Of a stretch of 64,000 nucleotides of DNA, positions 11,511-50,577 are shown one piece after another (within the stretch, counting starts at the first letter, position 1; every line of letters begins with the position of its first letter). The stretch spans positions 310,001 through 374,000 of IMG/VR virus record IMGVR_UViG_3300023179_000009, one strand, 5' to 3'. The position numbers and the translations under genes were made by a program. A model generated the notes under the pieces. It saw nothing but the letters and a program-made list of their open reading frames with translations. It made no database searches and was not told the origin of the DNA.

Positions 11511-11511
11511 T

Positions 11512-21382: not shown

Positions 21383-21387
21383 TTTTT

Positions 21388-24335: not shown

Positions 24336-24368
24336 TTAGTTGATACCAACTAAGGACACAGTTTTATT

Positions 24369-24441: not shown

Positions 24442-24475
24442 CTGTCGGTTTTTCTTATCTTCTAAGAGAATCTAT

Positions 24476-28309: not shown

Positions 28310-28350
28310 TACCAACTAGGTTGTTGTTCTCTTTTACACAAAGGATTTAT

Positions 28351-28758: not shown

Positions 28759-28824
28759 TATTGTTTGATACCAACTAGGGGGAGTGTGAACAACACTCCC
28801 CCTAGTTCCTTTTAGGAGAAGACC

Positions 28825-30850: not shown

Positions 30851-30873
30851 GCTCATACCCGAAAGGAAAACAA

Positions 30874-33741: not shown

Positions 33742-33773
33742 ATACTAACTAGAGGACTGCTCAACTTTTAAAT

Positions 33774-33845
33774 GCCCCGTTCGTATAGAAGTTAGTATAT
33801 CGGGCTTTCATCCCGAAGACGCCGGAGCGTTACCGGCACGGGGTA
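33774..33845 (+). tRNA. trnE: tRNA-Glu(UUC) with non-canonical T loop
   Basis: GCCCCGT/ACGGGGT, TCGGG-CTTTCAT-CCCGA, T arm GCCGG-AGCGTTA-CCGGC. Confidence 0.8.
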
Positions 33846-33848
33846 CTT

Positions 33849-34454: not shown

Positions 34455-34532
34455 GCATATATAAGCCTGAGGAATTCAAAAAAAGTTGCCCGATACCAAC
34501 TAGAACACCAGTTCGGTACTCTGGAGTATGTC

Positions 34533-35123: not shown

Positions 35124-35150
35124 TACCAACTAGGATATCAGGAGGACCAC

Positions 35151-38100
35151 ATGAAAGATCACGGTTGGACTAGGTGCAAAGATCAACTGCCCGAACCGGG
35201 CCAAATCGTTTATTACTTCGGGCCTTACATCGGCATTGGAATCGGCCGATTTGACCCGACGATACAAACTCAATGCTGTCACGAGGATGAAAATGGCCAC
35301 ATTGTTTACGAAGAAATGTCGCAGAAACTTATCGACATGATCAACCACAACAAGTTCATCAACAATAACTTTGGTGTGGTTGATGCTGATGATGCCCCCT
35401 TCTGGCGTGAATACGATGAAAAAGACGCCAAGGGTTGGTGCCCGATTCCTCCCGATTACATCACTCTCGAAGAAAGGTTGGAAAAAGATGCGCAACGATG
35501 AAAAGCCCCAGTTTGATCCTGATAGCGACGATGAGTACGACTATCTGAAGGAAAACTGGGTTCTCGGTGACGAACCTATGACCGAAGCCCAACGCCGAGA
35601 AAATGAAGCGTGGGATGAAGAGTGTCGCCGCAATAAGTGGTGATACTAACTAGGTGGGTGTTATCTTCACTTCACAGGAGTTTCAAATGGATCTTGCAAC
35701 CAGCAGCAATCTGAACGAACTGATCCGAAAGACAATCAAGCAAGAATGCGCTCCGGTAGATGTCCGTGCTCGATTTGTCGAGATGCTCGATGATTCATGG
35801 GCTGAGAATGATTTCCTCCGGACGTTTCATCTTACAGCCTCGACCGTAATCGAGGAATGTGATCCGACGATGTTTCAGCAGGAACTGCTGAACTTCACGG
35901 ACTCGTGCGATGATCTTATCGAGATCGACGAAGAGTATTACGACCGTGAGGCGGTAGAGTCTGTCAAGGCCGAACTGATTCAAGAGATCGAAAGCCTCTA
36001 ATACCAACTAGGAACAAGGTGAGTGAATCACTCACCTTGTTCCTACCTTTATGAAAGGAAGCGATTATGACTTTTGATCGTTGTTGTGAACTTGCCAATG
36101 AAGGTGTTCCAGGTGTGCTGATCGACTTTTGCGGCTATGAAGTGCCGCACAGCATCCACCGGCTCACGAAGAAAGTTCTTCGTCGCCTGAAGCGTGATGG
36201 CATCGTTGTGGTCAACTATGACGATAGTTTCGGTCGAGTTGCTGCCGAGGAACTTGAGGACATCGCCGGTGCGATTGGACTCACGTTCGCCCATGTGAGG
36301 AATCATCAGTTCGTCATCGCTGATGAGGACGGCGGCAAGATCAAGGCCATGGAACTCGAAAGTACCGATCAGGACTTCGAGAACACCTAATACCAACTAG
36401 GGGGGAGGTAACACTCCCCCCTAGTTTTTTTCGAAGGAACATCATGAACCTTTATTCCGCCGCCGATTACCACACAACAAAGTCCATGCACACTCTTTCG
36501 TGGATTTACGCCCACGGTGAAGCCGAAGATTTCATGCGTCATGATGTGCTTTTGACTCCTTATCCGGTGATTCGCCCGGAACCGGGACTGTATAGTGTCA
36601 CACTGCACAATCCTCAAGGTAAAGCCAAACAGGCTTTTATGTTCGTTTGGAAATATCAAGTTTCAGATGTCAGGGGGTTGGTTGTGCTTGGTGATGATCT
36701 CGAATCGGTGGATCACTGTTGTTCAATATTCAGAAAGGCGTTTGTCACTTTGTTTGATACCAACTAGAGCATTGTTCGATCACCCTCACTAAAAGGAATC
36801 AACATGATCAACGAAGCCTTCTTCAGTATCTGCCGGGATGCCAAGCCTGCTGTGAGCGGCTACGTCAGCCTGTATATGAATGTTCCCTACTACGGTGGCC
36901 CAGAGGAGGGCGGTTGGTGGGGCAGCGATACGGTGCTGGTGGCTCATCATCACTGTGGCAACGAAGTCGAAGCCGAGGCGGTCAAAATCAAGGTCGAGGA
37001 ATATGCTCGTGAACTGAGCGATGATGCCCGAAAGGATTTTGGTCGTGCTTGTCTCGCTCAGTGTGAATGGCTTGAAGCAAGGGGGCTCGATAGTGATAGC
37101 CTGCCCGAAGTGGACGGCGAGGTGAGTTACTTTGTGGTAGTTGAGGAAGTTCCGGGCGAACACGCCTCACGGGGTTGTCGTCACTACGAGTGATACCAAC
37201 TAGGCCGCTGTTCCTTCACACCAACCGAAAGGGAAACCATGATCATCAACGGAAAAGTTGAAACGATTGACGATTTCATCGCTATGGTTGATCGGGTAGT
37301 GAGTCGCAAGACTGGCATGAGCGTGCATGATCTTCCTGATTTCGCTTTTTGCGATTATTTCGAGGAAGATATGGATTACGAGGACGCCAAAGAAGCGGCC
37401 CGTGATTGTGCTTGTGAAATATTGGCCGATCTTGGTTTCGATGAAGACGAGTGATACCAACTAGATCGGTGTTCCTTCCCTCTATCTCTTGAAAGGAGAT
37501 TCATATGGATGAGCATGATATGCACATGGAAAGTATCCTGTGGCCGTGGATTGACGACGATTCACTGGATGTTCAGGACTATGACCCGAGTTGCGACCCT
37601 AGCGACGAGGACAACTATGACGATATGGACGGCGATCACGAGAGTGGTCTAGCCTCCGCCGGTTGGGGCACTGACGAAGATTATGGTTGCCATGGAAACG
37701 ACGAGTACTAATACCAACTAGGGGGGGTGTGGATGTGCCACACCCCCCCTAGTCCCTCAAATCCAGGAGAACGACATGAAGTTCGTCACGAAGTTTTTTA
37801 CGGATTGCATCGAGACGGTTGTTCGCAAGGTTCTTGCCGATGAGCAGTTCAAGAGCATGGTTGGCGAATCGGTCAAGACCCAGTTCGACAACCTCGACTA
37901 TGGACGACTCGCAGAAGAACTGCACGAGCGAGACGTTATCAACTACCGAGAACTCGCCAAGCACGTTGATGCTGACGAGATCGCTCAAAATGTCGATACC
38001 GGCGAAATCGAGAACAAGGTAGTCGAGCAGATTGATATGGACAGCGTCACTCAGGGTGTTGTCGATGCCATTGATACCGATGACATCGCAGAGCAGGTCA

Positions 38101-38449
38101 GGGAACATATCGAGATCGACTACAGCGAGATCGAGATCGACTATCAGGCACTTGGCCGTGCGTTGGTCGATCTGGCTGCGACCCGTAGGTAATACCAACT
38201 AGGGGGGAGGTAACACTCCCCCCTAGTTCCTTTTAGGAGTTTCAAATGGATCCGGTAGCAAACAAACTCGAACAAGTTAGCATCGCTCTTGAAATCGCCC
38301 GGATTTGGGACGATTGCAATGCTGATGGAACTCTCACAACCGGCCAAATGGAAGCGGTTGCCGATCTTGCCAATCGTTTGGCCGAGTTGGTAACGGCTCT
38401 TGCCGGGTGGGAGGATTGGAAAAGCCTCAAGTCCACCTACTGCCGGTAA
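35151..38449 (+). other. Array cargo CDS (35151-35501, ~35488-35643, ~35687-36001, 36067-36390, 36444-36767, 36804-37193, 37239-37454, 37505-37711, 37776-38192, 38246-38449)
   Basis: One ORF per motif interval; several are strongly acidic. Confidence 0.78.
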
Positions 38450-38510
38450 TACCAACTAGGGGAGTGTGAGAAAAACAAATCTCACACTCCCCTAGTTTGG
38501 AGGAAACAAC

Positions 38511-38990
38511 ATGAAGGTTCTGTTTCTTGATATCGACGGAGTTCTCAACACCCCAAAAATGCTTGGGCGTTTCGGTTTTGACTTTATTGACACTGTTCTT
38601 GTGGCTCTCGTGGCAAGAATCGTCAAAGAAACCGAGTGCAAAATCGTATTATCGTCAACATGGCGAATTGACGAAAAAGATCGGTTTGTTGCTACCCGTG
38701 AACTATCCGAGCATGGATTGACTATCCATGATTGCACCCCGGTAATTACCCGTAAGCCACCCGACGATCCATCTAATCTTCTTGACGAACTTTGGGAAAC
38801 ATGGAACTGGCCCAAGCGTCACGAAGAAATACAGTTATGGCTTGATCAAAATCCTGTATCTCGATTCGCTATTCTTGATGATCTTCAAGAGGCTTGTATT
38901 GAAGGATCGTTCTTCAAGACCGACGAGAATCGTGGCATAACTGTGGAGATTGCAGAAAAGATCATTCAACATCTGAATGATACCAACTAG
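38511..38990 (+). CDS. HAD-superfamily phosphatase (Swiss-Army-knife RNA-repair type)
   Basis: LFLDIDGVLN, IVLSSTWR, FAILDD. Confidence 0.82.
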   Translation: MKVLFLDIDGVLNTPKMLGRFGFDFIDTVLVALVARIVKETECKIVLSSTWRIDEKDRFVATRELSEHGLTIHDCTPVITRKPPDDPSNLLDELWETWNWPKRHEEIQLWLDQNPVSRFAILDDLQEACIEGSFFKTDENRGITVEIAEKIIQHLNDTN

Positions 38991-39035
38991 TAGCGTGTAG
39001 TCACTGTGGCTACAACACAACCCAAAGAGGAAATC

Positions 39036-39473
39036 ATGATCAACGTCGAAATGACGGTGCGTGAGGCGGTGGAACTGCTGCACAACCTGCCCGAAGGCAA
39101 CACGCTTCGAGAGCGAGTTTTCTCGGTTCTGGAATCGCAGGTAGGCGAGGGCAAGCGAACCCTCACACTCCACAGTTTTCCTGCGGAGCGAAAGATCGCC
39201 TGCATCAAAGCCGTTCGAAACGGTATGCAGTGGGGTCTGAAGGAGTCGAAGGATTGGGTCGAAGTTGTGCAAGGCGAACGGGTCTGCACGAATCCTCATG
39301 CCATCCGCACGGATGACTATTCGTGGAACCGTTGGGATGATAGTGAGCCGTGTTTGCCGCTTGAATACGAGTGGGTGAACGGCAAACCCAACACGCTCAC
39401 GGCTCCGACCGCCACGGTACTCCAGATGGCATCGGAAATGCGGGCTGTCGGTGCGGTGGTCACCACCGCTTGA
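39036..39473 (+). CDS. Protein containing a ribosomal bL12 C-terminal-like domain
   Basis: KIACIKAVRNGMQWGLKESKDWVE matches the KI.VIK.VR...GLKEAK..VE signature. Confidence 0.6.
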   Translation: MINVEMTVREAVELLHNLPEGNTLRERVFSVLESQVGEGKRTLTLHSFPAERKIACIKAVRNGMQWGLKESKDWVEVVQGERVCTNPHAIRTDDYSWNRWDDSEPCLPLEYEWVNGKPNTLTAPTATVLQMASEMRAVGAVVTTA

Positions 39474-39535
39474 TACAAACTAGGGGAGTGTAGGAAACAC
39501 CTACACTCCCCTAGTCTTTTTCTGAAAGGACCACA

Positions 39536-40356
39536 ATGATCATCCTCGATACCGACCTGAGCAACGCTCCGGGTTGCGTTTGCAAGATTCTGAACGAGCG
39601 GGAAACTCGGAGTATCCTAGTCCAAACCGACTATGATGCTCCGGGCGTGGCCCGCACGTTCGGCTGGGATATGACCGAAGTCCAGCCGCAGAACTACGGT
39701 TACTACGGGTTGAAGTGTCATCACCGTGGCACCGATGGCACGATTGACTGCCCCGATTGTGGCGTCAAGGCTGGCACGTTCATTGCAGCCGCCATCGAGT
39801 TTATCGACTCGAATGACGGTGCAACGGCGGAAGATCCGGGGTACTTCGAGTAATACCAACTAGCAGGGTGTGGGAAAAACCTACACCCTGCTAGTCCCTC
39901 TAACAGAAAGGTCGATCATGCGAACGATTCAAGATCTGGCAAAGGAAGCCCTCCAGGTTCAGGACGCCTGCAATCTTTCCGGTGTGGTTCACGGTTTCAG
40001 CCGTGCGATCACCGAGTTGCGGGAAATCCTCCGAACAACCGGCGGAGACCTGTCAACCGATGCGGTAAATACGCATCCCATCTGCAAGATGTGGGCAAGC
40101 AAGATCCACGATTTGACACGAATGGGATTTGGTGACGCTGATAGTTTCAGTGACGCCTTCTACCAGTGTTCAAATCTCTCTGAGGGAAAGACTGCCGCTT
40201 GATACCAACTAGGGGGGAGGTAACACTCCCCCCTAGTTCTTTTTCACGGAGGAAAAGATGTTTCGACGGATTGTAGGACAACTTGCCGATTGGCATTTTT
40301 TGGTTGAAGTTCTTGTTGGTTTCACAATCATGTGGTTCGTTTTGTTGATGTTGTGA
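39536..40356 (+). other. Array cargo CDS (39536-39853, ~39918-40202, 40258-40356 32-aa hydrophobic peptide)
   Basis: Motif-hairpin-RBS-ATG architecture. Confidence 0.7.
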
Positions 40357-40401
40357 TACCAACTAGGTGGATGTTCCAACCACAACCCCGGAGAACTCAC
40401 A

Positions 40402-40950
40402 ATGAGTTACACCGCAGCCCCTGCCTGTCAGTTGTTGGCAACACATTGTTGTTGCTGTGGTCGTCCGCTGGTCGATAGTGTTAGTGTCGAACTGGGCATC
40501 GGCCCGGAATGTCGCAAAGGCGATACTGGTGGTATCGACGCTGCCACCCAGGATGATTGCAACCGGCTTACTCGTTCCGCTGCTGTTGCCGCTCAGAGTG
40601 GTAACGTGGAGCGTGTTCGAGAGATTGCCGAAACAATCGAATCGCTCGGTCTTTCGGAACTGGCAAACAAGATTCGCAAGCGTTTCGTAAACGCCGAAAA
40701 GCGATGCAAAATCACCATCGTTGACAATGGTGATATGCTTATCGTTGAAACTCCTTTCCGTAGGAAAGATTCGAGTGGCTTCATCGAAGCGTGGCGAAAC
40801 ATTCCCGGCAGGCGGTATGACCGCAACCGTAACGCCAACGTGGTTCCTGTGAATCAGAAGCGCCAGTTATGGCAACTTCTGCAACGGTTCTTCCCCGGAG
40901 AGTTTGGCAAAGGGCCACAGGGAATATTCAGAATCCCTGAGGCTGCTTGA
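40402..40950 (+). CDS. DUF6011-like Zn-finger protein
   Basis: CCCCGRPLVDSVSVELGIGPEC. Confidence 0.6.
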   Translation: MSYTAAPACQLLATHCCCCGRPLVDSVSVELGIGPECRKGDTGGIDAATQDDCNRLTRSAAVAAQSGNVERVREIAETIESLGLSELANKIRKRFVNAEKRCKITIVDNGDMLIVETPFRRKDSSGFIEAWRNIPGRRYDRNRNANVVPVNQKRQLWQLLQRFFPGEFGKGPQGIFRIPEAA

Positions 40951-41001
40951 TACCAACTAGGTGAGCGTGAGGGTTGTTCCTCACGCTCACCTAGTCCTTT
41001 T

Positions 41002-41603
41002 ATGAAAGGGTTTATCGTGGCAACCAAAGTCAAAGTCACAAATCGAATCAAGCGGCAGATCCAGGCCGAGGCTCTCCGGGCATTGCACGACCGGGGACAC
41101 TTCACCGCCGCCGAGCGGCACGCCGGAATCGAGGCTGACCGCTGCATGTGTGGCGGTTTCGTGTGGGGCACGAATCTGCTCTGCAACGAGTGTGTGATGG
41201 AACTCGCCCGCAAGCAAAAGTAATACCAACTAGGGGAGTGTAGGAATCACCTACACTCCCCTAGTCTTTCAAAGAAAGGTTGACCATGCGAAAGATCGAA
41301 AAGAAAATGATCGAGGCGATTCAGAATCGCAAGGACATGAGCCTCAACAACACCGTGGTCAAGCACGGTACAGCCACCAGCGTTGTGTTTCTCCACAATC
41401 ATCCCATTTGCATTTTCATGTGGGCTGATAATGCGGTGGCTGTCAGCAATTGTGGCTGGTCAACGAACACCACCAAAAGCCGCCTGAATGCGGTTTTGGG
41501 TTCGTTTTGTGATACGGGGATTCACCAGCACAAGCATGTCTGGTACATGGGCAAGGAAGAGTTCCGCAACGGAACTCGTGTCCCGATGAAGCAGATCGCC
41601 TGA
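41002..41603 (+). other. Array cargo CDS (41002-41223; 41280-41603)
   Basis: Motif-hairpin-RBS architecture. Confidence 0.75.
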
Positions 41604-41667
41604 TACCAACTAGGGGAGTGTAGGAATCACCTACACTCCCCTAGTTCTTTTTCCAGAAAGGGAAAAC

Positions 41668-42129
41668 ATGAAACTCATCCTGATGCGTGGCGTGAGCGGC
41701 AGCGGCAAAAGCACGCTGGCCGAAAAGATTTGCAGCGAACAGGAATTTGCTGTAATTGTTTCAACCGATCACTATTTCATGGTCGATGGTGAATACCGAT
41801 TCGACCCGAAGCGTCTCGGTGAGTATCACTCCGCTAACGTGAACCGAACCGAACAGTTCATGGTTGAACGGTGTGCGTGTATCATCGTGGACAACACGAA
41901 CACACAAGCGTGGGAAATGAAACCCTACGTCGAGTTGGCCATGAAGCACGGCTACGCTATCGAAATCCATCAGCCCGATCCGGTCAGTTTCGAGGAACTG
42001 ATGCAGCGGCAGGCAAACCGGGCCGACAGCAACAAGGCTCTGCCCGCCGAAGTGGTAAAGCGGATGCTCGACCGATTCGAGCACGATGTGACAGTGGCAA
42101 AGATTCTCCAATCGAAGCGACCCTTCTGA
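41668..42129 (+). CDS. P-loop kinase, AAA_33 / polynucleotide-kinase (N4BP2-like) family
   Basis: LILMRGVSGSGKSTLA, VSTDHYF, IIVDNTN...EMKPY. Confidence 0.82.
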   Translation: MKLILMRGVSGSGKSTLAEKICSEQEFAVIVSTDHYFMVDGEYRFDPKRLGEYHSANVNRTEQFMVERCACIIVDNTNTQAWEMKPYVELAMKHGYAIEIHQPDPVSFEELMQRQANRADSNKALPAEVVKRMLDRFEHDVTVAKILQSKRPF

Positions 42130-42186
42130 TACCAACTAGAAGGAGTGTGATAAGCACTCCCCCTAGTTCTTTTTCCAGAAAGGAAC

Positions 42187-43286
42187 ATGATGGATCACGA
42201 ACAGGCCATGCGGAATGCCATGAAGCGTGTGATGACGTTCATGGATAGCCTCTCGCCGGGGAACAGTCCCCGTGCCACAACAACTGACAGCCCGATGATT
42301 CACTTCAATGGCTGGAATCGGTGGTGTGTCAAGTTCGACACACACAGCGGTAAAAACTATCACGCATTTGGTTCTACGCTCGTCGAAGCGTTCAATCGGT
42401 TGGTCGATGAACCAACCGTGTCTGATACCAACTAGACCAGTGTTCCCTTCCCCTCTTCAAAGGAGTCTGCCATGCAGATCAATTTCCTCGGTGAGAACTA
42501 CAACGTCGAGCCGGTTGCCATGCGATACACAGACGGCAATCTGGCAATTCAAGTTCTGCGTGCCGATGGGCCTTTCGGTATGCTCTCGACCAATGTCGAG
42601 GGTGTGCAACTCGCCCCGAACGAGTTCTGCGTGAAAACGTGGAGCGAGAACGATCCGTGGGCATTGGATCTTATCCGCCAGTGTCCGCAGTTCGAGAACA
42701 CTGGACGCACGTTCCGTAGCGGGTTCGTCAGCGGCCCGATCTACCGGATGGTTGGTTGATACCAACTAGATCGATACCGAACTACGGCCCTCGTCGTTCA
42801 AGACAGAAAGGACGCTGTAGTGTCATGCCAAAGCGGTGGCCACCGCACGGCAATCGTTGCCAAAGTACACGGCAACGATCAGCACACTACGGAAATGCGG
42901 GTGCGATACCCGCCGGGGTCAGCATACACTGTAGGCCAAAAGCCGAACAACGAGGCGTCTATCCCACGCCTACAACCCCGAAAGGGGAGAGAGTGTATGG
43001 GGTCTAATACCAACTAGGGGGACATGGGGAGACAACCCATGTCCCCCTAGTTCTTTTATGAAAGGCAAACATGGTTCCACGAGAAATGTATCGGTGGGAA
43101 TATTTCCATGCGATGGGCAACAACTGCCGATTGCATGGAATGTCATCTCACGATGCCCAAACCGTGATCGATAAGGCCGCTGGTTTCGGCAACGATTTCG
43201 AAAACTTCTGGACAGGATTTCTGTACGGCAGAAGTGATCAAATCGCTTCTTTGCCAAGCAAAGATTCCGTGGTCTGGGTTTTTTAG
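42187..43286 (+). other. Array cargo CDS (42187-42435; 42472-42759 DUF4313-like; 43071-43286)
   Basis: 42472 has LAIQ...PFGMLSTN...FCVKTWSEN. Confidence 0.65.
42770..43005 (+). ncRNA. Candidate structured non-coding RNA cassette
   Basis: No RBS-supported ORF; many nested stems (see findings). Confidence 0.5.
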
Positions 43287-43385
43287 TCTGTCACATTTCG
43301 ACAGGCCGTGCGTAATACCAACTAGAACGGTATCGAGAATGGCTCTCGACGCCCACAACCCTCCTGTCCAGAAAGGACAACTGTC

Positions 43386-43700
43386 ATGAAGTTCATCCTC
43401 AATGCGTTTTCTCTAAACATGATCGGCACATTTCCGGCGACCATCACGGTCGAGGAAGTCTCGACCCACGAAGCCTGTGTCGAGGCTCACGGTGTCACCA
43501 GTGGCGTCGGCCACCCCGATACGGCGGCGGTGTTCGCTTCGATTCTCGGTACGCCCGTTCCGATGAATCGTGCAACCGTCAGTCTCGTGTCTGGTGATCG
43601 TGTGCTGGTGGGCCAATACAGTGGCCCTCGTCTGCCCGAGGGTGCAACTACGCTGCCCGAGGGTGCCACGATCAAGTGGCTCGTCGTCTCTGTCAACTGA
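43386..43700 (+). CDS. acrIII-1: DUF1874 / AcrIII-1 cyclic-oligoadenylate ring nuclease homologue (anti-CRISPR type III)
   Basis: ILNAFSLNMI...SGVGHPDTA...PMNR...LVGQYSGPRLPEG: GH, NR and RLPEG signature of the STIV B116/SIRV1 gp29 family. Confidence 0.8.
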   Translation: MKFILNAFSLNMIGTFPATITVEEVSTHEACVEAHGVTSGVGHPDTAAVFASILGTPVPMNRATVSLVSGDRVLVGQYSGPRLPEGATTLPEGATIKWLVVSVN

Positions 43701-43771
43701 TACCAACTAGCAGGGTGTGGTGATGAGCCACACCCTGCTAGTCCTTCAACCCCCAACCCTGAAAGGCAATC

Positions 43772-44149
43772 ATGCCCTACACCGCTTGCGTCCTCGAAGA
43801 GTCATCCCGCACCACGCTCGTGGAGTGGATGTATTCCAATCACGAAGTGCCCGAGCACTTCGAAATCGTCGGCCACCACTGCACCGTCGATCTGAAGCCC
43901 ATCGCCAAAAGCATGGGCTGCGATCTGGATGGCCAGCGACACGAAATGCGTGTCGTTCGTTTCGGTCGTCTCGACGGCATCATGGCTGTCGAAGTCGAGA
44001 CGGTTGTTCCCAGCAAGAACGACCGCAAGCACATCACCTTGTGCTACGACAAGCCGAATGGCTGGAAACCGAAGCAGTCGAACGACATCGTGGAATGGAC
44101 TGACATCGAACCGTTCGTTCTGCACGGTGTCGTGAAGGAATGTGCGTGA
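43772..44149 (+). CDS. 2H phosphoesterase (RNA-repair type)
   Basis: Two HxT-like motifs: HHCTV and HITL. Confidence 0.7.
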   Translation: MPYTACVLEESSRTTLVEWMYSNHEVPEHFEIVGHHCTVDLKPIAKSMGCDLDGQRHEMRVVRFGRLDGIMAVEVETVVPSKNDRKHITLCYDKPNGWKPKQSNDIVEWTDIEPFVLHGVVKECA

Positions 44150-44212
44150 TACCAACTAGGGGGATGTGATGAAAGTCACATCCCACCTTTCCTTTTCACA
44201 AAAAGGCCGATC

Positions 44213-45325
44213 ATGAACACTGATTTTCAAATGATGGTCGAGGCGCAGGTGGGTGACAAAACGGTCACCGTTTATTGCGAAACCCATGCAGAAGCGTGGG
44301 CTGCGGAAAATGCCATCCGCAACATGGCACGACAGTTCGGCTTGCAAGTGGGCACGGTGACAATCACCGTCAACGACACACCACGGTGGCGAGTCGATAC
44401 AATCTGGCTCAATCCTCCATACAGTGTTGTGCAGGATCAGTGATACCAACTAGGGGGGTGTGAACAACACCCCCCTCTTCTCTTGAAAGGAGAACGACGA
44501 TGGAAAACGAAGGCCAGATGCGAAGTAGGACATGCACGTTCGTCAACAGAACGTACATGTTCGAACACATCGAAGAGGCACTGATGTTTGCTCCTCCGGA
44601 GCAGACGATCAGCATCGAGATTCTGCCAGATGGACGCTACAGTGTTACCGAAACGTGGCGGGATGCGGAGCCTGCCGACCGCAGACGGTTCGCCAGCATC
44701 TGCAATCGTGGCGGTAACTGATACCAACTAGGGGGACACGGGGAACAACCGTGTCCCCCTAGTTCCGTTTTCCCTCAAACCAGAGAGGCCATCATGACGA
44801 TCAAAGTTCAGATTCCGGGCCGAGTCACAGCCTCTGCCCTTGTCGAGTCCGGACTCGACGCTTCTAGCAACGGAGTGCTGACATTCCACGCTTTCAGCGA
44901 CGCCATGAAAGCGAGGGTGTTGGAACTGATTGCCGCAGGGCAACACGTGGTGGTCAAGGCCACCACCGAAGTGCCCCGAACCGGCGATTGGTTCGAGCCA
45001 GCACAGTGATACCAACTAGGTGGACACGAGGACACAACTCGTGTCCCCCTAGTTTCGTTTCTCCTAACCCCGGAGTTTTTCCATGAACGATACAATCAAA
45101 TGGCGAAACTTGCCCGCCCGCATGACCCCGAAGGTCGATCCCTCGTTCGATGAACTGTGTCGTGCGATGAAGAATCGTACACAGATCACGGTCATCGGAG
45201 CATGGGGCCATCCCATCACTGGCCTCGTCAACAAAATCGAGGCAGAGGGTGGTAGCGGTCGATGCTGGAACGTGACGATCAGTCACGGCATCCACACCAG
45301 CACGATCTTCGTCCGCACGGCGTGA
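44213..45325 (+). other. Array cargo CDS (44213-44443, 44500-44721, 44794-45009, 45083-45325)
   Basis: Each ends exactly on the TGA of a motif copy. Confidence 0.78.
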
Positions 45326-45393
45326 TACCAACTAGGGGGACACAGGACACAAGCCTGTGTCCCCCTAGGTTCGTTTCCACCCCGGAGGATCAC

Positions 45394-45945
45394 ATGATCC
45401 ACATCGCTAGTTTCGTTCGGCGTCAAACCGCCGACAGTCGGTTCAGCCACTGGACGCTGGACGACAATGCTCTCGTCCAAAGGATCGAAGCCGGTCTGCC
45501 CAATGCCAAACCCGGATACCGGGATGGCGTGGTGCTCGTGCCGGTCGATCCCGATGGCTTCTTCAGTGCCACGGTCACGCTGACCAACGGCCAAAAGCTG
45601 GTGGGCGAGTTCGCCAGCCGTCGCACCGGCGAAGAGCCTCGTAAGAGTCTCGCCGCCATCGGCCAGAAGCAGCCCGCCGGTACGGTGTGGGTCGTGCTCT
45701 ACGCCCACCACGTTCTCGCTGAGAAAAACGAGAACGAGACCGATGCCGACTGGGAAGTGGTCAGCGTCAACGCCAGCCCGAGCGTGGACGCTGAACCGGC
45801 TCCCATGCCGCCGGAAACGCTGATCGCCAACCACTTCGAGTTGGATGGCGGGACGGCGACGAAGATGAGCGACAGTGACTTCGTCGCATCGCTCAAGGCC
45901 AGCGTCCTCTACTGGAAGGACAAGGCACAGGTTCAGCCTGAGTGA
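45394..45945 (+). CDS. DUF3228-like protein
   Basis: FVRRQT, KPGYRDGVVLVPV, RRTGEEP, VVLYAHHVLAE, DWEVVSVNA, PM.PET, GGT. Confidence 0.7.
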   Translation: MIHIASFVRRQTADSRFSHWTLDDNALVQRIEAGLPNAKPGYRDGVVLVPVDPDGFFSATVTLTNGQKLVGEFASRRTGEEPRKSLAAIGQKQPAGTVWVVLYAHHVLAEKNENETDADWEVVSVNASPSVDAEPAPMPPETLIANHFELDGGTATKMSDSDFVASLKASVLYWKDKAQVQPE

Positions 45946-45979
45946 TACCAACTAGAACAGTGTCGAGGGGGATGGCAAC

Positions 45980-47405
45980 GTGCTGTCCCCCTCGACGGTT
46001 CGATTCCTTCAGGAGAACAAAATGGAGTTGCACATCTACCAGCTCGGGGGTCTCGACAACGACTCCCTGATCGGCATCGCTCACGACACGCACACGATGC
46101 GGTCGCTGATCGAACTGGCCGAACGCCGGGGTGCCACGGGCGTGAGCCTGCACGGCACCGTCCCGCACTTGCGGGAGAGCGTGAGCGGTGAGTTCACGCT
46201 GGACGAGGCCAAGCGGGAATACAACAGGGCCGTCGATGCGGTCAACGCCGTCATCATGGACGGCATCGACCCGGCGTTCGGGATGCAGCCCTGATACCAA
46301 CTAGGGGACTACAGGAACGGCCTGTAGTCCCCTAGTTGCGTTCCTGCCCCGGAGACTTCGCCATGATTTCTGAAGGGCCGAACGATCTTTTCATTGAAGA
46401 CGGCGAAAGCCTGTCCTCGATCATCGAACGGATCGGCAAGAAGTGGCCCGGTGCCACACTCGATCATTGCAAGATCGAGCACAACGACTGGTTCGAAAAA
46501 ATGATCGTGAAGTTGGTATCGCCTCAGTGATACCAACTAGGGGGACACGAGGACACAACTCGTGTCCCCCTAGGCTCGTTTTCCTCAACAACAGGAGCCT
46601 TCCCCATGAAGGTGCAAAAGAAAGTTTTCCGTTTCCACGCCAAGCGTGGGCAGCAGGATATGGTGATCGAACTGCTGCGGCAGTATGGTCAACCGTGGAC
46701 GACCACGAGCGCCGAGGGCATTCGTGTGTTCGTCGAGTTGCCCGAGGGCGTCAGCAAGCGGAGCGTCGATAAGATGCTGCGTGATGCTGGTGTGCCGGGT
46801 GCGGCATCATGCCGTAACGTCCCCATCGTGGACGTTGGATATGATGCCGGAAGGATGGAGCCTGCCCTTGAACGGCTCTATCGAGCCGGATACTTGAACC
46901 GAAAGGTCAAGATCTCGTGGGGCGGCACACGGGTCACCATCGGCTATCTTCGGGCAGAAGATTACTGCGACGGGCCGGGATTCGGCTTGTACGTAGACCC
47001 CGACAAAAAGATGAACGGCTACCAACTGCCGACATCGGCAGTTCAAGGAACACCGGGACAGAAACTGCCGTGGTGTTGATACCAACTAGGGGGACACAGG
47101 ACACAAGCCTGTGTCCCCCTAGGTTCGTTTCCCCTCCAACAAGAAAGATTCTTCACATGAAGAACTTCCTCAAGCTGCTCCTCTGCTCTGTTCTGGTCGG
47201 ATCGTGCTTCGCCGCCATCATCTGCGGCTACGTGATGGTCGGAACGGCCATGGGGTATTTCCACCCCAACTACGTTCCCGAAGCGGGTGAAACGCTTCTC
47301 GGTTTCTACGTCACGCTGTACACATGCAGCGTGGCCCCATTCCCGTTGCTGGTGCTGCTCATCAGTACCAGTACGGCCGTTGCGAGTGTGTTCGAGCATC
47401 GGTGA
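45980..47405 (+). other. Array cargo CDS (45980-46294, ~46363-46530, 46606-47079, 47157-47405 membrane protein)
   Basis: Each ends on a motif TGA. Confidence 0.75.
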
Positions 47406-47415
47406 TACCAACTAG

Positions 47416-47601
47416 AACACCACACGAGTGAACACCGTCTACGGCTGGTCATCCTCACCCCCTGCTTGCAGGCGTAGAGGGTGCCAAACCGGAAGCGTGG
47501 GCCGACATGCGGGTTCGATCCCCGTAGTCGTTTCCTGTCTGGTGCGGATCATAGGGGCTGATCGTAAATGCTCCGCCAGCCGTAGACGGCTTCACCTTGT
47601 T
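47416..47601 (+). ncRNA. Candidate structured RNA with a tRNA-like T arm
   Basis: 14-bp terminal stem 47435-47448/47576-47589; GCGGG-TTCGATC-CCCGT at 47509-47525. Confidence 0.5.
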
Positions 47602-47681
47602 AATACCAACTAGGTTGGTGTCGAGTGAGTCACAACGTGTGACACACTGACGTTCGGTAGGTTTCTTTCAGGAGGATCGCC

Positions 47682-48056
47682 ATGAGCAAGCCCAAGGTCA
47701 AGTCCGAGCCCGTCGCCCGCACCGCCAAGCCCAAGTCGGCCAAGCAGTTGGCCAAGCGGGCGGCGAACATCGCTGCCTGGGAAGCCCGCAACGCCGCCCT
47801 TCGGAACGGCACCTTCAAGGGCGTGGTCGAAAAGGCCGCTGAGGCGAAGGCCCGACACGTGGCCGAGCGGATGGCCGAGACGGAGAAGGCCCGCACGATG
47901 GTGGTGACCCACATGAGCCACCCGGTCTACGGCCAACGGCTCAGCCGTTTCCTCAACGGCAGCAAGGCCGACCCGAGGTTGCTGGCCAACGTGGTGATCC
48001 CCAACTGGATCAAGACGCAGGGTATCGTCGTCGATCACGTGCGACCCACCACGTGA
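47682..48056 (+). CDS. Basic Ala/Lys-rich hypothetical protein
   Basis: AGGAGG RBS, MSKPKVK start, high-GC codons. Confidence 0.75.
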   Translation: MSKPKVKSEPVARTAKPKSAKQLAKRAANIAAWEARNAALRNGTFKGVVEKAAEAKARHVAERMAETEKARTMVVTHMSHPVYGQRLSRFLNGSKADPRLLANVVIPNWIKTQGIVVDHVRPTT

Positions 48057-48306
48057 TCTGATACCAACTAGGGGGGTGTGAGTGATGCAAGTCGCTCACA
48101 CCCCCCAGCGGGTTGACGGCCCGCCATCCTGTCCCCGTCTCGACCCCTGAGTCATCCACACTCATACGCTTCGAGTGACTCAAGTCGGGGGATGGGATAA
48201 CTGGCCGTCGCCAGTCTTCCACCTAGTGATACCAACTAGGGTGGTGTCGAGTGAGTCACAACGTGTGACACACCGACGTTCGGTAGGTTTCTTTGGGAGT
48301 CATGCC

Positions 48307-48675
48307 ATGAGCAAGACGAAGAGCAAGGTCAAGCAGCCGGAGGCCGTGGTCGAGCAGCCGGTCGCCCCGGTCGAGACGAAGAGCATCGCTTGGCCGGTCG
48401 AGGCCGAGAAGGAACTGCTCTCCTCCGGTGGCTACATCAGCGGCGGTCGTTTCTATCTGCCGATGAATCGTGCGGCGGGTACGTGCGAGTACACGAGCAA
48501 GGCTGGTCGCACGGCGACCTACTGCATCTTCCGGGCCGACACGAACGGCTACAACTTGCTGCCCATCAGCAAGAGTGGCAAGGTCGCTCACAGCGACATC
48601 AAGCAGAACGGCAAGTACCTCAACGTGGGCTTCCGTGTCAGCAGCGAACGTGTCAGCAAGGTCGTGATGCGGTAG
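48307..48675 (+). CDS. Hypothetical protein; shares leader and N-terminal style with 47682
   Basis: GGGAG RBS, MSKTKSKVK start. Confidence 0.75.
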   Translation: MSKTKSKVKQPEAVVEQPVAPVETKSIAWPVEAEKELLSSGGYISGGRFYLPMNRAAGTCEYTSKAGRTATYCIFRADTNGYNLLPISKSGKVAHSDIKQNGKYLNVGFRVSSERVSKVVMR

Positions 48676-48735
48676 TGATACCAACTAGGGGGGAGCGTGG
48701 TGAAGAGCCACGCTCCCCCCGACTGTCGAACGGAG

Positions 48736-48770
48736 TGCCGCAGGGTCGAGCGATGACCCTGCGGCACTTT
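48736..48770 (+). terminator. Intrinsic terminator near the array end
   Basis: AGTGCCGCAGGGTC-N7-GACCCTGCGGCACT-TTT. Confidence 0.6.
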
Positions 48771-49098
48771 TCGAAACTCAGAAACTCTGAGTGATACCAA
48801 CTAGAGGGGTGGGTACCCTATGCCACTGCTGGCGGATACCGCACCACCCTATTGTTTATAACCCTTTAATTTTTTATTTTTATCTAATAGGGTTTTGTTT
48901 TTCAAGAACTCTGCGGCAAAAATTTCCGCCGCCGAATTTTTCTCACCCTCTATTAGGCTCAAAAAATTATTAAAAGCCGTTTTCTGTAAAAATCGCCGTT
49001 AAAAATTTTTGCAAGTACTACTATGATTATAATGAAGACTTAAAAGTATTTTATTTCGCTTTAAAATTTGTAAAATAATTAAAAATATAAGGACAATT

Positions 49099-50577
49099 AT
49101 GGATAAAAATACAAAAAAAAATACTAGTAATAACAAAAATAAAAAAGGTTTAGATTTTAGAACTTTATCTTTTTCTTTAGTTTCATTGGGGGGTTTCTAT
49201 AGAGATTACACTAAAGGACAAGTTCAACTTCCGTCTCATCAAAATCCCAGATTTTTAGCTGGGGGGTGGAACGATAGAAAAAAGAAAAAATGGATAAATC
49301 GAATTAAAAGAGTGGCAAGTGATAAGAATCTTCCATCAAATCAAAAAGCAATAGGGGGAGTTATAACAACATATCAAATTGAAAAGAACAACTCCCAAAA
49401 TATGTCTGGAAATATTCAAGAACCAAAATTCATCAATGACGGCGCACATAGGGCAATACACGCAATTAAGGATTATTTAGAAAAAACAAAACCAGACCTC
49501 AAATTAAAGAAAAAAAACTTGAAAAAATTCAACCAACAGCAAAAAAATTATGAAAAATTTTTAAGTATGTTAGATGAAGTTTTAATTGGAGAAGAGTTCA
49601 AACTTTACAAAGATGAAGATGCCGCCATGCAGGACTTTGTAAGCCTCAACACGGAAGGTTCTCGTGCCACGGCTTATGAAATTTTAACTGGTATAATGGA
49701 AGGAAAAATAGAAAAACACTGGGGTATTGGTAAAGATAAAATTCTTTCTTTAAAAGAAAGAATAGAAAATGTCACACCAGACAGATTGATCTTCTTGGGA
49801 TTTAAACCAAAAGATGTTGGGGCAATATTGATTGGAGATAGCGATGTTAAAAAGAAACAAAAACAAAACACCATAAGAGATAGTCGTGCTTCTTTTCTAA
49901 GATTTGTGAACAAAAATATTTTCCAATCACCTTATTTCGGAATTTCTAGAAGCCGTTTTTCAGACAATACTGGACGAGGGCAAAGCGGACATAAAAAAAT
50001 AGAACCAGAACTATTTGATTTTTTTAAAAATAATAGCTTGGACTATTGCTTACAACAAATTGAGAAATGGGAGTGTTTTGCTCAAGATGCTTTTGCTTTC
50101 TATAAGCAAATTTGTAAACAAAAAGAATTTCAAGAATTTGAAATAAATTATGATGAAAATGCTATTCGGTGGTGGTTTGCAGCATTTATTTATATAAATA
50201 ATAATAATTTAGGCATTGAATTTGCAAGAAAATTCACTGAGTCTTTTCTTATCAAGCAAAAAAACGGACAACAATTAACTTATACAAATAAAAAAGGACA
50301 AATAAAAGTATTAAATTTACAATTACAAAAATTTAATAATACTTATGTAACAAGTCTTGGTTTGGATGCTATAAACCTTGAAGAAAAATCAAACAAACCT
50401 TGTAGGAAAAAGCCAAATTTAAAACCAGTGGCTGGTTTTCATAATAGTCATATAAAAAGTTTTGCAAAACACGGAGAAGGCGAAACTGTGCCCGAAAACG
50501 CAATAGAAAACAGGGCACGAGGAGTAAAAGATATGACTGTGGTTGAAAAACAAAGAATTTTGTTTGCTAATGTGTAA
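49099..50577 (+). CDS. DUF262 (ParB/Srx-like) + C-terminal HNH-like protein, GmrSD/SspE-like architecture
   Basis: LPSHQ..R...W...KKWI, IGGVI, FINDGAHR; C-terminal HNSHIKSFAKHGEGETVPENAIENRARG. Confidence 0.55.
   Translation: MDKNTKKNTSNNKNKKGLDFRTLSFSLVSLGGFYRDYTKGQVQLPSHQNPRFLAGGWNDRKKKKWINRIKRVASDKNLPSNQKAIGGVITTYQIEKNNSQNMSGNIQEPKFINDGAHRAIHAIKDYLEKTKPDLKLKKKNLKKFNQQQKNYEKFLSMLDEVLIGEEFKLYKDEDAAMQDFVSLNTEGSRATAYEILTGIMEGKIEKHWGIGKDKILSLKERIENVTPDRLIFLGFKPKDVGAILIGDSDVKKKQKQNTIRDSRASFLRFVNKNIFQSPYFGISRSRFSDNTGRGQSGHKKIEPELFDFFKNNSLDYCLQQIEKWECFAQDAFAFYKQICKQKEFQEFEINYDENAIRWWFAAFIYINNNNLGIEFARKFTESFLIKQKNGQQLTYTNKKGQIKVLNLQLQKFNNTYVTSLGLDAINLEEKSNKPCRKKPNLKPVAGFHNSHIKSFAKHGEGETVPENAIENRARGVKDMTVVEKQRILFANV

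What the first reader, a model, noticed from the sequence alone, without database searches (positions are those of the whole stretch)
43386..43700. AcrIII-1-type ring nuclease carried as a single array unit
Seen: DUF1874 hallmarks NAFSLNM, S.VGH.DTA, NR and RLPEG, bounded by motif copies 43314 and 43699. Known: AcrIII-1 (DUF1874) degrades cyclic tetra-adenylate and neutralises type III CRISPR signalling; the GH histidine and the Arg/Glu residues are catalytic or ligand-binding. Inference: direct evidence that the array stocks anti-defence genes, which makes the ~80 unknown neighbours candidates for new anti-defence proteins.
Basis: partly seen in the sequence, partly recalled or inferred. Interest (0 to 1): 0.75.

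Follow-up and report, generated by a model that had tools for sequence, protein, structure and literature searches.

The report
Ring-nuclease gene in phage cassette array
A 459-kb freshwater phage carries a well-conserved AcrIII-1-type (DUF1874) ring-nuclease gene as one unit of a >100-unit, one-directional array of single-gene cassettes, each headed by the same 13-base promoter-like motif at which related phages have reshuffled the cassettes.

Summary
Window 43386-43700 (+) encodes a 104-aa DUF1874/AcrIII-1 protein: it passes Pfam's cut-off, a confident model matches the AcrIII-1 structures, the catalytic His and 7 of 8 other mapped cA4 contacts are kept, and a homodimer is predicted. T-R-ATACCAACTAG copies bound it on both sides, and the downstream copy supplies its stop codon.

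The window lies in a 458,813-bp virus record. The motif has 110 copies (up to 1 mismatch), all on the + strand, confined to genome 265-359 kb. Copy density and GC (0.36 to 0.60; rest of genome about 0.33) rise toward an abrupt right end.

My best reading is that the motif is a -10-type promoter element for a phage sigma factor. A Y-R pair sits exactly 7 nt after it in 83/110 copies, it precedes tRNA genes, and its first copy heads an operon encoding a sigma factor. It is often followed by a terminator-like hairpin.

Independent metagenome contigs carry the same arrays with cassettes added, lost or reordered, and junctions fall in the motif. The closest known analogue is the PeSL modules of T4-type phages.

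"The array stocks anti-defence genes" is only partly supported. One Acr-family member, its constant 2H-phosphodiesterase neighbour and RNA-repair enzymes fit. About 80% of the cassettes are unknown. No activity, transcript or host evidence exists.

The parts
43313..43325 (+). 13-mer TAATACCAACTAG heading the AcrIII-1 cassette (promoter-like, proposed -19..-7)
   Evidence: sharply bounded logo T-R-ATACCAACTAG from 110 copies, with nothing conserved upstream of it.
43331..43332 (+). T-A (Y-R) pair at the fixed offset after the motif; proposed -1/+1 of transcription
   Evidence: Y-R at this offset in 83/110 copies, against 5-40 (mostly 10-26) at other nearby offsets. This is inference; no 5' end data exist.
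43333..43349 (+). Short, degenerate hairpin (TCGAGA-ATGGC-TCTCGA). Related arrays have a full G5...C5 hairpin here.
   Evidence: L127 has GGGGGAGTCGAG/CTCGACTCCCCC and L130 has GGGGGCGTCGAG/CTCGACGCCCCC, a compensatory change.
43371..43377 (+). Shine-Dalgarno-like GAAAGGA, 8 nt before the ATG
   Evidence: The same 5' leader is conserved in L127.
43386..43700 (+). DUF1874 / AcrIII-1-type ring nuclease ORF, 104 aa
43698..43710 (+). Next 13-mer TGATACCAACTAG; its TGA is the ORF's stop codon
43707..43741 (+). Perfect 14-bp hairpin (CTAGCAGGGTGTGG / CCACACCCTGCTAG) of the next unit, starting inside the motif
   Evidence: minimum free energy about -31.7 kcal/mol.
43772..44149 (+). 125-aa 2H phosphoesterase, the constant downstream neighbour of the AcrIII-1 cassette
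   Evidence: adjacent in L127, L130, L131, L174; invariant H36-x-T38 and H87-x-T89; pLDDT 97, CNPase catalytic-domain fold, TM 0.62-0.72; weak tRNA_lig_CPD match.
1084..48804 (+). The part of the motif-delimited cassette block inside the window (86 motif copies). The block starts at genome 265,395, which is 44.6 kb left of the window.
49099..50577 (+). 492-aa DUF262 (GmrSD_N) + HNH-like ORF, the first gene after the array's abrupt right end. Whether it belongs to the system is unknown.
   Evidence: language-model and structure look-alikes only; a lead.

Best explanation
The ORF encodes a functional-looking DUF1874 homodimeric ring nuclease. It would cut cyclic tetra-adenylate using His43 as general acid, blunting cA4-dependent type III CRISPR effectors of the unknown host.

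It is packaged as a self-contained expression cassette. The parts, in order, are: the 13-mer T-R-ATACCAACTAG, read as a -10-type promoter element spanning -19..-7; a Y-R start 7 nt after the motif; an optional GC-rich hairpin plus T-run; a Shine-Dalgarno site; and the ORF, whose stop codon is the first triplet of the next 13-mer.

I infer that host RNA polymerase carrying a phage-encoded sigma-70-family factor reads these promoters. The gene for one such factor sits in the operon behind the first motif copy.

The hairpin would terminate read-through from the upstream unit. A transcript begun at the Y-R lacks most of the 5' arm and so escapes termination.

Because every unit carries the same 13-mer, and often similar hairpins, recombination at these modules adds, deletes and permutes cassettes among related phages. 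This works like the PeSL modules of T4-type phages.

Shown: family membership, array anatomy, and cassette-wise shuffling with junctions in the motif. Inferred: promoter function, the sigma pairing, the hairpin's insulating role, and anti-CRISPR use in vivo.
For: Gene:
- Pfam over cut-off and PDB sequence hits.
- 3,089 homologues; the 120 listed all carry PF08960.
- AlphaFold2 model with pLDDT 96.8. Foldseek top hits are 6scf, 2j85, 2x4i and 2j6b at TM 0.75-0.81, followed by Csx1-Crn2.
- SIRV1 gp29 contact residues N8, S11, N13, H47, T50, R66, Q81, R85 map to N6, S9, N11, H43, T46, R62, Q77, R82. All are invariant in 47 homologues.
- Dimer score 0.67 against a best control of 0.00; that mark was reached by 20 of 30 proteins solved as pairs of one chain and 1 of 23 solved as single chains.

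Promoter reading:
- The logo is sharply bounded.
- Y-R sits exactly 7 nt after the motif in 83/110 copies.
- All copies are on the coding strand and confined to one 94-kb block.
- The motif precedes tRNA genes by 26-32 nt.
- There are three phage sigma-70-family genes, one in the first motif-headed operon. That arrangement and the motif family persist in a relative whose sigma is only 47% identical.
- Another huge phage has an analogous array with a TATAAG-containing module at the same place.

Hairpins:
- 52% of 241 copies fold at -18 kcal/mol or lower, against 2.9% of shuffles, with 94 distinct 5' arms.
- Terminator-like sites: 30 found against 13.6 ± 4.5 expected.
- Mean folding energy is -28.7 kcal/mol for the full hairpin and -5.6 from the proposed start.

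Shuffling:
- Independent contigs share the motif with cassettes inserted, lost or permuted.
- 22 of 53 internal homology-block starts lie within -5..+2 of a motif start, against about 2% expected.
- A 2011 sample lacks several cassettes and carries a roughly 10% diverged AcrIII-1 unit between near-identical neighbours.
Against: - No transcript data: no listed RNA run holds the stretch.
- The motif does not resemble any sigma-70 consensus, and sigma-70-like promoters are not enriched.
- Which sigma, if any, reads the motif is a guess.
- A promoter alone does not explain why 49 of 60 ORFs in the right 25 kb end in the motif's own stop codons, nor the smooth GC gradient.
- The identical motif occurs in a 56% GC element in which no sigma gene was seen in the parts held.
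- For the protein, S49 of gp29 is Asp45 here.
- The host and any type III system are unknown.
- SIRV2 gp37 was reported not to work as an Acr in native infection.
- The family also includes cellular Crn2.
Confidence: 0.6

Rival explanations
1. The 13-mer, with or without the hairpin, is primarily a site-specific recombination site of an integron-like gene-capture platform. New, foreign high-GC cassettes enter at the right end and old ones ameliorate toward the left. The recombinase is supplied in trans, for example by the small serine recombinase that sits in the first unit of the same-motif arrays of the 56% GC element, or by the DUF262-HNH-like nuclease at the array end.
For: - Junctions between arrays lie in the motif.
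- GC, GC3 and unit density form a monotonic gradient with an abrupt right end.
- ORF ends are fused to the motif.
- A resolvase (PF00239, E 1e-27) and ArdC are the first units of the class-B arrays.
- A nuclease-like ORF lies at the boundary.
Against: - No tyrosine, serine or Y1 recombinase is found in the 459-kb record.
- The motif is a single half-site with no inverted partner.
- About half of the copies lack a strong hairpin.
- The motif also heads tRNAs and long operons, including the sigma operon.
- The fixed Y-R is not explained.
- Cassettes are also shared with an array that uses a different module.
Confidence: 0.15
2. The block is transcribed as long polycistronic RNA. The 13-mer is an RNA processing site that lies immediately after each stop codon. 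The adjacent hairpins protect the new 5' or 3' ends of monocistronic mRNAs and of tRNA precursors.
For: - The motif abuts stop codons.
- Hairpins start inside the motif and are structurally conserved with varied sequence.
- tRNAs are interspersed.
- All copies lie on one strand.
Against: - No candidate sequence-specific RNase was identified.
- About half of the units lack a strong hairpin.
- The Y-R at a spacing typical of -10-to-start is better explained by initiation.
- The analogous array in L200 has a TATAAG-type module at that place.
Confidence: 0.12
3. The DUF1874 protein is a real family member but does not serve as an anti-CRISPR here. It could degrade another signal, act on its product together with the neighbouring 2H phosphodiesterase for nucleotide salvage or RNA repair, or bind a host protein, as reported for SIRV2 gp37.
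For: - A report that gp37 is not an Acr in native infection and inhibits a host methyltransferase.
- Constant pairing with a CNPase-like 2H enzyme.
- RNA-repair genes are abundant in the block.
- No host CRISPR information is available.
Against: The cA4-contact residues and the catalytic His are invariant across the subfamily. The family's biochemical activity is established for viral members, including a bacteriophage member.
Confidence: 0.25

Closest known systems
AcrIII-1 / Crn2 (DUF1874, PF08960): SIRV1 gp29, STIV B116, AFV3-109, phage THSA-485A homologue
   Same: Same Pfam family and same fold (TM about 0.8). The catalytic His and 7 of 8 other listed cA4 contacts are kept. A homodimer is predicted. 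The gene is viral.
   Different: - 20-33% identity to the solved archaeal-virus proteins.
- S49 is replaced by Asp.
- A subfamily-specific duplicated LPEGAT segment follows the Arg loop.
- The setting is a bacterial-type (Shine-Dalgarno) huge phage from lakes.
- Neither activity nor in-vivo role has been tested.
PeSL (promoter-early stem-loop) regulatory cassettes of T4-type phage hyperplastic regions (PMC2839356, PMC4122927)
   Same: Short conserved promoter and stem-loop modules flank small, mostly unknown, non-essential ORFs. Indels, replacements and reordering between related phages are bounded by the modules.
   Different: - The module here is a 13-mer unlike any sigma-70 promoter.
- The hairpin lies after, and overlaps, the promoter-like element rather than before it.
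- There are over 100 units in one 94-kb, one-directional block.
- Stop codons are built into the motif.
- There is a strong foreign-GC gradient.
- The same motif occurs in an unrelated 56% GC element.
- Promoter and terminator activity and mini-circles have not been shown.
Integron cassette arrays
   Same: A long co-oriented array of single-gene cassettes of varied composition. Content and order vary between relatives, junctions fall at a repeated site, and a compositional polarity suggests ordered accretion.
   Different: No IntI or other recombinase in the phage. No attC-type imperfect palindrome with R/L cores. Cassettes appear to carry their own promoter. tRNAs and long operons are also headed by the site.
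Anti-defence islands in the leading region of conjugative plasmids (PMC11541004)
   Same: A co-oriented cluster of small genes that includes anti-defence functions. ArdC appears in the same-motif array of the 56% GC element, and an Acr-family gene appears here.
   Different: A phage, not a plasmid. No evidence that this block enters first or is read from single-stranded DNA. The repeated element is a 13-mer, not an Frpo-type long hairpin.
2H phosphoesterases (CNPase, LigT, tRNA-ligase CPD domain) - for the neighbouring ORF 43772-44149
   Same: Two invariant H-x-T motifs; predicted fold matches the CNPase catalytic domain (TM 0.62-0.72).
   Different: Only 125 aa, roughly 60% of the CNPase domain. 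No Pfam hit over cut-off. Substrate unknown: A2>P from cA4 cleavage, or other cyclic nucleotides.

Membership tests
AcrIII-1 / DUF1874 (PF08960) | Matches the family HMM above the curated cut-off | tested here: met
   35.9 bits against a cut-off of 26, E 8.3e-9; phrog_5063 at 5.7e-19.
AcrIII-1 / DUF1874 (PF08960) | DUF1874 fold | tested here: met
   AlphaFold2 pLDDT 96.8. Foldseek: 6scf, 2j85, 2x4i and 2j6b at E 2e-8 to 5e-6 and TM 0.75-0.81.
AcrIII-1 / DUF1874 (PF08960) | Absolutely conserved catalytic His (H47 of SIRV1 gp29) | tested here: met
   H43 aligns with H47. Its role is taken from 10.1101/778746. It is invariant in 47 homologues.
AcrIII-1 / DUF1874 (PF08960) | cA4-contacting side chains (N8, S11, N13, S49, T50, R66, Q81, R85) | tested here: met
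   7 of 8 are kept (N6, S9, N11, T46, R62, Q77, R82); S49 is D45.
AcrIII-1 / DUF1874 (PF08960) | Homodimer with the ligand site at the interface | tested here: met
   Model only. ipSAE 0.67 against a best control of 0.00; the mark was reached by 20 of 30 proteins solved as pairs of one chain and 1 of 23 solved as single chains. The interface includes residues 7-11, 13, 75, 77 and 79. The result may reflect memory of solved homologues.
AcrIII-1 / DUF1874 (PF08960) | Cleaves cA4 to A2>P / A2-P | not testable with these tools
   Needs an enzyme assay.
AcrIII-1 / DUF1874 (PF08960) | Neutralises cA4-dependent type III CRISPR during infection (needs early expression and a susceptible host) | not testable with these tools
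   Host unknown and no RNA data. See the caveat.
PeSL-type regulatory cassettes | A repeated short intergenic module before small ORFs of a variable region | tested here: met
PeSL-type regulatory cassettes | The module contains a strong sigma-70-like early promoter | tested here: not met
   No sigma-70 consensus in the motif; sigma-70-like sites are not enriched (9 found against 8.4 expected). A different promoter type is inferred from the Y-R spacing.
PeSL-type regulatory cassettes | A stem-loop that can terminate transcription | tested here: inconclusive
   Pattern and energy only. About half of the units lack a strong one. No functional test.
PeSL-type regulatory cassettes | Differences between related phages are bounded by the modules | tested here: met
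PeSL-type regulatory cassettes | Excised mini-circles | not tested
Logan contigs cannot show them.
Integron | IntI tyrosine recombinase next to the array | tested here: not met
   PF00589 is absent from the 459-kb record while the control rang in 14 of 14 genomes.
Integron | attC sites (imperfect palindromes with paired core sites) | tested here: not met
   Only a one-sided 13-mer is conserved. Hairpins are optional and are perfect palindromes of varied sequence.
Integron | Co-oriented cassettes whose content and order vary between relatives | tested here: met

The most novel reading that the evidence does not exclude
The block is a phage-borne gene-capture platform. A 13-base module serves as both promoter and recombination site, letting a huge phage accrete foreign single-gene cassettes (GC3 up to 0.9 in a 33% GC genome) in a polar fashion at one end. 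Many of the cassettes would be counter-defence genes. The same module is shared with a separate 56% GC element that carries a serine recombinase and ArdC. In effect this is an integrase-less, or trans-served, 'integron' of phages, whose ~100 cassettes (mostly of unknown function) form a library of candidate anti-defence proteins.
Probability: 0.2. Interest if true: 0.9.

Novelty: new variant of a known kind. Interest (0 to 1): 0.62.

Why it matters
The ring nuclease is an ordinary new member of a very large family: 3,089 homologues, many of them in phages.

What matters is its packaging. The unit boundaries in this array are exact. The same cassette pool is seen reshuffled in lakes sampled from 2011 to 2025. 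At least one known anti-CRISPR family, a cyclic-phosphodiesterase partner and RNA-repair enzymes sit among roughly 100 small proteins, most of them of unknown function.

If the 13-mer is a sigma-specific promoter, it gives a ready handle for expressing and screening each cassette, and a clean case of promoter-mediated modular evolution on a scale not described for T4-type PeSLs.

If it is also a recombination site, it would be a new kind of gene-capture system in viruses.

Tried and rejected
- Megablast of the AT-rich flank against GenBank phages found no match.
- IMG/VR scans with a 17-mer (no hit) and a 14-mer found only single chance matches inside coding sequence, including one on a 465-kb contig. 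Own or near records are hidden there.
- A literature search for the motif returned only unrelated primer-type hits. Searches for a prior description of such arrays found none.
- The T7-type RNA polymerase search was uninformative because the control did not ring.
- No RNA polymerase beta subunit was found.
- No tyrosine, serine or Y1 recombinase was found in the phage.
- Most 'joints' and loose ends in the laid contigs were other units sharing motif and hairpin, mapped to the wrong copy. I did not count them as rearrangements.
- No RNA run was listed as holding the stretch.
- Rfam finds no known family at the motif or hairpins.
- Comparing the AAA+ genes beside the phage array and the class-B array gave only generic similarity: 22% identity, E 1e-5.
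- The precomputed 'AcrVA2-like' label on a relative's 384-aa ORF was not reproduced for the same-size ORF of this genome.
- I rejected a T7-like promoter resemblance, an attC resemblance and an IS630/REP-like origin of the CTAG-flanked hairpins. These rested on memory only or lacked the required enzyme.

Full report
**1. The observation**

Window 43386-43700 (+) is an open frame of 104 codons with a Shine-Dalgarno-like GAAAGGA 8 nt upstream. It matches Pfam PF08960 (STIV_B116-like, DUF1874) at 35.9 bits against a cut-off of 26. It also matches the solved family members AFV3-109, SIRV1 ORF114/gp29, STIV B116 and 6scf by sequence, with E from 3e-10 to 8e-8. The flanking motif copies are at 43315-43325 and 43700-43710. 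The TGA at 43698-43700 is both the stop codon and the first triplet of the extended motif.

**2. The protein**

A database search returned 3,089 homologues; the 120 listed all carry PF08960. In an alignment of 47 of them, N6, S9, N11, H43, T46, R62, Q77, R82 and E85 are invariant.

The HMMER alignment to SIRV1 gp29 places these at gp29's N8, S11, N13, H47, T50, R66, Q81 and R85. In the preprint of the AcrIII-1 paper, H47 is the general acid, H47A causes a more than 2,500-fold loss, R85 locks the closed dimer, and the other residues contact cA4 (10.1101/778746). Only S49 differs; it is Asp45 here.

An AlphaFold2 model is confident (pLDDT 96.8). Its best structural matches are 6scf (AcrIII-1 with cA4), 2j85, 2x4i and 2j6b at TM 0.75-0.81, followed by Csx1-Crn2 fusions.

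A two-copy prediction scored 0.67 against a best control of 0.00. That mark was reached by 20 of 30 proteins solved as pairs of one chain and 1 of 23 solved as single chains. The interface includes the N-terminal NAFSLN segment. This supports a dimer but may partly reflect memory of solved homologues.

Biochemically, the ORF is very probably a cA4 ring nuclease. Whether it acts as an anti-CRISPR in this phage is not shown:
- The host is unknown.
- No transcript data exist.
- A study of SIRV2 gp37 reports that a DUF1874 protein failed as an Acr in native infection because it is made late.

**3. The genome and the array**

The window is bases 310,001-374,000 of a 458,813-bp virus record, about 91% complete. 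Its contig comes from a lake metagenome.

ATACCAACTAG occurs 83 times exactly, or 110 times with up to one mismatch. All copies are on the + strand and lie only between 265,395 and 358,804.

Per 10 kb, the copy number rises 3, 1, 5, 8, 7, 7, 12, 18, 23, 26 and GC rises from 0.36 to 0.53, reaching 0.59-0.63 in the last 2-3 kb. Both then drop at once to the genome's usual level of about 0.33. GC3 of the last cassettes reaches 0.8-0.9.

The logo is a sharply bounded 13-mer, T-R-ATACCAACTAG, with nothing conserved upstream. In the right 25 kb, 39 of 60 unit ORFs stop at the motif's TRA and 10 at its TAG.

About half of all copies, and most in the right part, are followed by a perfect GC-rich hairpin that starts inside the motif (AACTAG...CTAGTT), then a T-rich run, then the ribosome-binding site:
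- Across nine arrays, 52% of 241 copies fold at -18 kcal/mol or lower, against 2.9% of shuffles, with 94 different 5' arms among 121 strong hairpins.
- A simple scan finds 30 terminator-like sites in 35-49.2 kb against 13.6 ± 4.5 expected. The strongest are these hairpins. Sigma-70-type promoters are not enriched.
- Rfam sees no known family there.

**4. What the motif most likely is**

A pyrimidine-purine pair lies at a fixed offset, 7 nt from the last motif base to the purine. It is present in 83 of 110 copies, against 5-40 (mostly 10-26) at neighbouring offsets, and in 60 of 76 copies without a hairpin. That is the canonical distance from a -10 hexamer to a transcription start, and it places the 13-mer at -19..-7.

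Further points fit a promoter:
- The motif stands 26-32 nt before two tRNA genes, so it is not a translational signal.
- It heads long operons in the left part of the block, encoding AAA ATPases, T4-type RNA ligase 1, an SNF2 helicase and a TnpB-like protein.
- The phage has no detectable RNA polymerase beta subunit but has three sigma-70-family genes.
- One of these (285 aa) lies in the operon behind the first motif copy, and that copy is itself preceded by TATAAT. The same 501-aa ORF / sigma / AAA+ arrangement and the same motif family (ATAC[C/T]NACTA[G/C/T]) are kept in a relative whose sigma is only 47% identical.
- A different huge phage (487-kb contig) has an analogous raised-GC array. 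There each small gene is preceded by a different, clearly -10-like module (…TTTTCTAG-YCTR-TTCGTATAAGAAT) and then a hairpin.

I therefore read the 13-mer as a phage-specific promoter element. The hairpin would insulate each unit by terminating read-through. A transcript starting at the Y-R would retain only about -5.6 kcal/mol of the -28.7 kcal/mol hairpin and so would not terminate itself. All of this is inference; no 5' ends have been seen.

**5. The cassettes move**

Contigs from other samples and studies carry the same motif, the same hairpin style and homologous cassettes. They come from JGI 3300043572 and 3300071646/7, ENA ERZ4214608 and ERZ28594094, and several further JGI lake metagenomes. 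One of them, L127, also carries the same right-end boundary sequence.

Between arrays, orthologous cassettes are 37-98% identical in protein. Many are present in only one array and some are permuted: 45325 and 45945 are swapped in L127, while 36757, 41223 and a 48229-like unit are displaced in L130, and L154 is extensively reordered.

Homology blocks begin at -2, -3 or 0 and end at +9 to +15 relative to motif starts. Blocks adjacent in one array lie kilobases apart in the other. Of 53 internal block starts, 22 fall within -5..+2 of a motif start, where about 2% would be expected. Many of the remainder begin just after the hairpin or 5' leader.

In laid contigs, a 2011 sample has zero depth over several cassettes between 44.8 and 47.0 kb while the flanks are covered 5-27 times. 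It also carries an AcrIII-1 unit with 24 mismatches between neighbours that have 0-1 mismatches. Most other 'joints' in that output were mis-mapped sister units, and I discounted them.

The AcrIII-1 cassette and the following 125-aa ORF stay adjacent in every array that has both.

A 111-kb, 51% GC contig (L126) carries an 89% identical AcrIII-1 gene without the motif. It ends at the same codon, so in the array the motif has been joined exactly to the natural stop.

**6. Comparison with known systems**

The closest described analogue is the PeSL of T4-type phages. These are composite promoter and stem-loop modules that flank small ORFs of hyperplastic regions and mediate modular shuffling (PMC2839356, PMC4122927). 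The differences here:
- The module is not sigma-70-like.
- The hairpin follows and overlaps the promoter-like element.
- The scale is over 100 units in one 94-kb block.
- Stop codons are built into the motif.
- There is a polar GC gradient.

The array is not an integron. No IntI or other recombinase is present and there is no attC-type site.

**7. An unexpected relative**

A separate class of about 56% GC contigs (36-65 kb) carries a short array of 5-7 copies of the identical motif, Y-R included. Its units, in order:
- a 126-aa ORF plus a small serine recombinase (PF00239, E 1e-27);
- ArdC (ArdcN plus metallopeptidase);
- three or four small cassettes, one of them 49-61% identical to window cassette 37505.

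The array ends with ATACCACCTAG and a terminator. It is flanked by a large N6/N4 methyltransferase, a UvrD/PD-(D/E)XK helicase-nuclease, an SNase, a RuvB-like AAA+ and a reverse transcriptase.

Why two such different replicons share the module is unexplained. Possibilities are a satellite that listens to the phage's sigma, a shared host factor, or a recombination site for the resolvase. This keeps the integron-like reading alive at modest probability.

**8. Does the array stock anti-defence genes?**

Of 57 cassette proteins from 25.9-48.7 kb, only about 10-11 match any Pfam family: Kyano_Gp96 (two), DUF6915, HAD_SAK_2, AAA_33, DUF6011, Metallophos, DUF1874, an L7/L12 C-terminal domain, DUF3228 and DUF3072. 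PHROGs adds the names polynucleotide kinase, RNA ligase, metallophosphoesterase and guanylate kinase.

The constant neighbour of AcrIII-1 (43772-44149) has two invariant H-x-T motifs, a confident model (pLDDT 97.3) and a CNPase-type 2H phosphoesterase fold (TM 0.62-0.72). Its family is small: 32 homologues, all at least 58% identical. Because AcrIII-1 leaves 2',3'-cyclic phosphate ends, a functional pairing is plausible, but it is untested.

The content is therefore compatible with a counter-defence and RNA-repair repertoire, and ArdC in the class-B arrays points the same way. Still, one known Acr family among roughly 100 units, alongside tRNAs, a sigma factor, helicases and a TnpB-like gene in the same block, is not direct evidence that the unknowns are anti-defence proteins.

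**9. Verdict**

- The gene is a new member of a known family. I put about 0.85 on biochemical ring-nuclease activity and about 0.5 on in-vivo Acr use.
- The array is a new variant of promoter/terminator-module shuffling, with features no current explanation covers: the GC polarity, the motif-encoded stops, and the motif shared with a recombinase-bearing element.

Interest 0.62.

Noticed in passing
window 43772-44149 (+): A 125-aa compact 2H phosphoesterase with invariant H36-x-T38 and H87-x-T89 and a CNPase-like predicted fold. It always sits directly after the AcrIII-1 cassette in related arrays. It could be a partner acting on A2>P, or an independent cyclic-nucleotide phosphodiesterase.
   Followed up: yes
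L182 / L196-L199 (contigs of 36-65 kb, about 56% GC), e.g. L182:6488-10041: A different mobile element carries a short array with the identical ATACCAACTAG motif. Its first units encode a small serine recombinase and an ArdC anti-restriction protein. It is flanked by a large methyltransferase, a UvrD/PD-(D/E)XK helicase-nuclease, an SNase, a RuvB-like AAA+ and a reverse transcriptase.
   Followed up: partly
L200:1-14200 (487-kb contig, another huge phage): An analogous raised-GC (0.42-0.53 against 0.33) one-directional array of small genes. It has a different repeated module (ACATTTATCC ... AAAATTTTCTAG-YCTR-TTCGTATAAGAAT plus a hairpin) and shares three cassettes (46-64% aa) with this window.
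   Followed up: partly
window 49099-50577 (+): A 492-aa ORF immediately right of the array's abrupt end resembles DUF262 (GmrSD_N) + HNH endonucleases by language-model features and predicted structure. It has no Pfam hit over cut-off.
   Followed up: partly
window 8868-9123 (+): Group I catalytic intron (Rfam RF00028, 70 bits, full-length model match) inside an array unit.
   Followed up: no
window 9843-9918, 10783-10857, 24255-24335, 24369-24442, 33774-33846 (+): Five tRNA genes (Leu-CAA, Ile-TAT, Asn-GTT, Lys-TTT, Glu-TTC) sit inside array units. Two of them start 26-32 nt after a motif start.
   Followed up: partly
genome 276,068-278,781 (L137:1068-3778), left of the window: An HTH_17 protein (347 aa) followed by a TnpB/Cas12f-like protein (541 aa; Cas12f1-like_TNB 5.9e-9) within the motif block.
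   Followed up: no
genome 266,969-267,823; 158,673-159,563; 34,687-35,220 (-): Three sigma-70-family genes in the phage. One (178 aa) matched only the sigma region-2 model (the only sigma region searched for) and, from memory, is about the size of T4 gp55. Another lies in the operon behind the first motif copy, which is itself preceded by TATAAT.
   Followed up: partly
window 51187, 56648-57157 (-), 57180, 57867-58454 (-), 58515, and ten more ORFs across the genome: 15 of 530 ORFs of at least 100 aa begin with M-x(1-3)-F-x-[EQ]-[YFWL]-[LIFV] (e.g. MKTFNEWL, MRNFKQYL). None lies in the array. This may be a shared N-terminal signal.
   Followed up: partly
L126 (111-kb contig, 51% GC): Carries an 89% identical AcrIII-1 gene in a tight operon without the motif. 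It has its own GC-rich repeat (…GACAGGCGGGCGGCC…, 14 copies) before some genes.
   Followed up: no
window 47603-48056 and 48229-48675: Two paralogous lysine-rich cassettes (MSKPKVKSEP… and MSKTKSKVKQPE…) with near-identical leader hairpins lie near the right end. Between them are ORF-less units (48061, 48678) made only of motif and hairpin.
   Followed up: no
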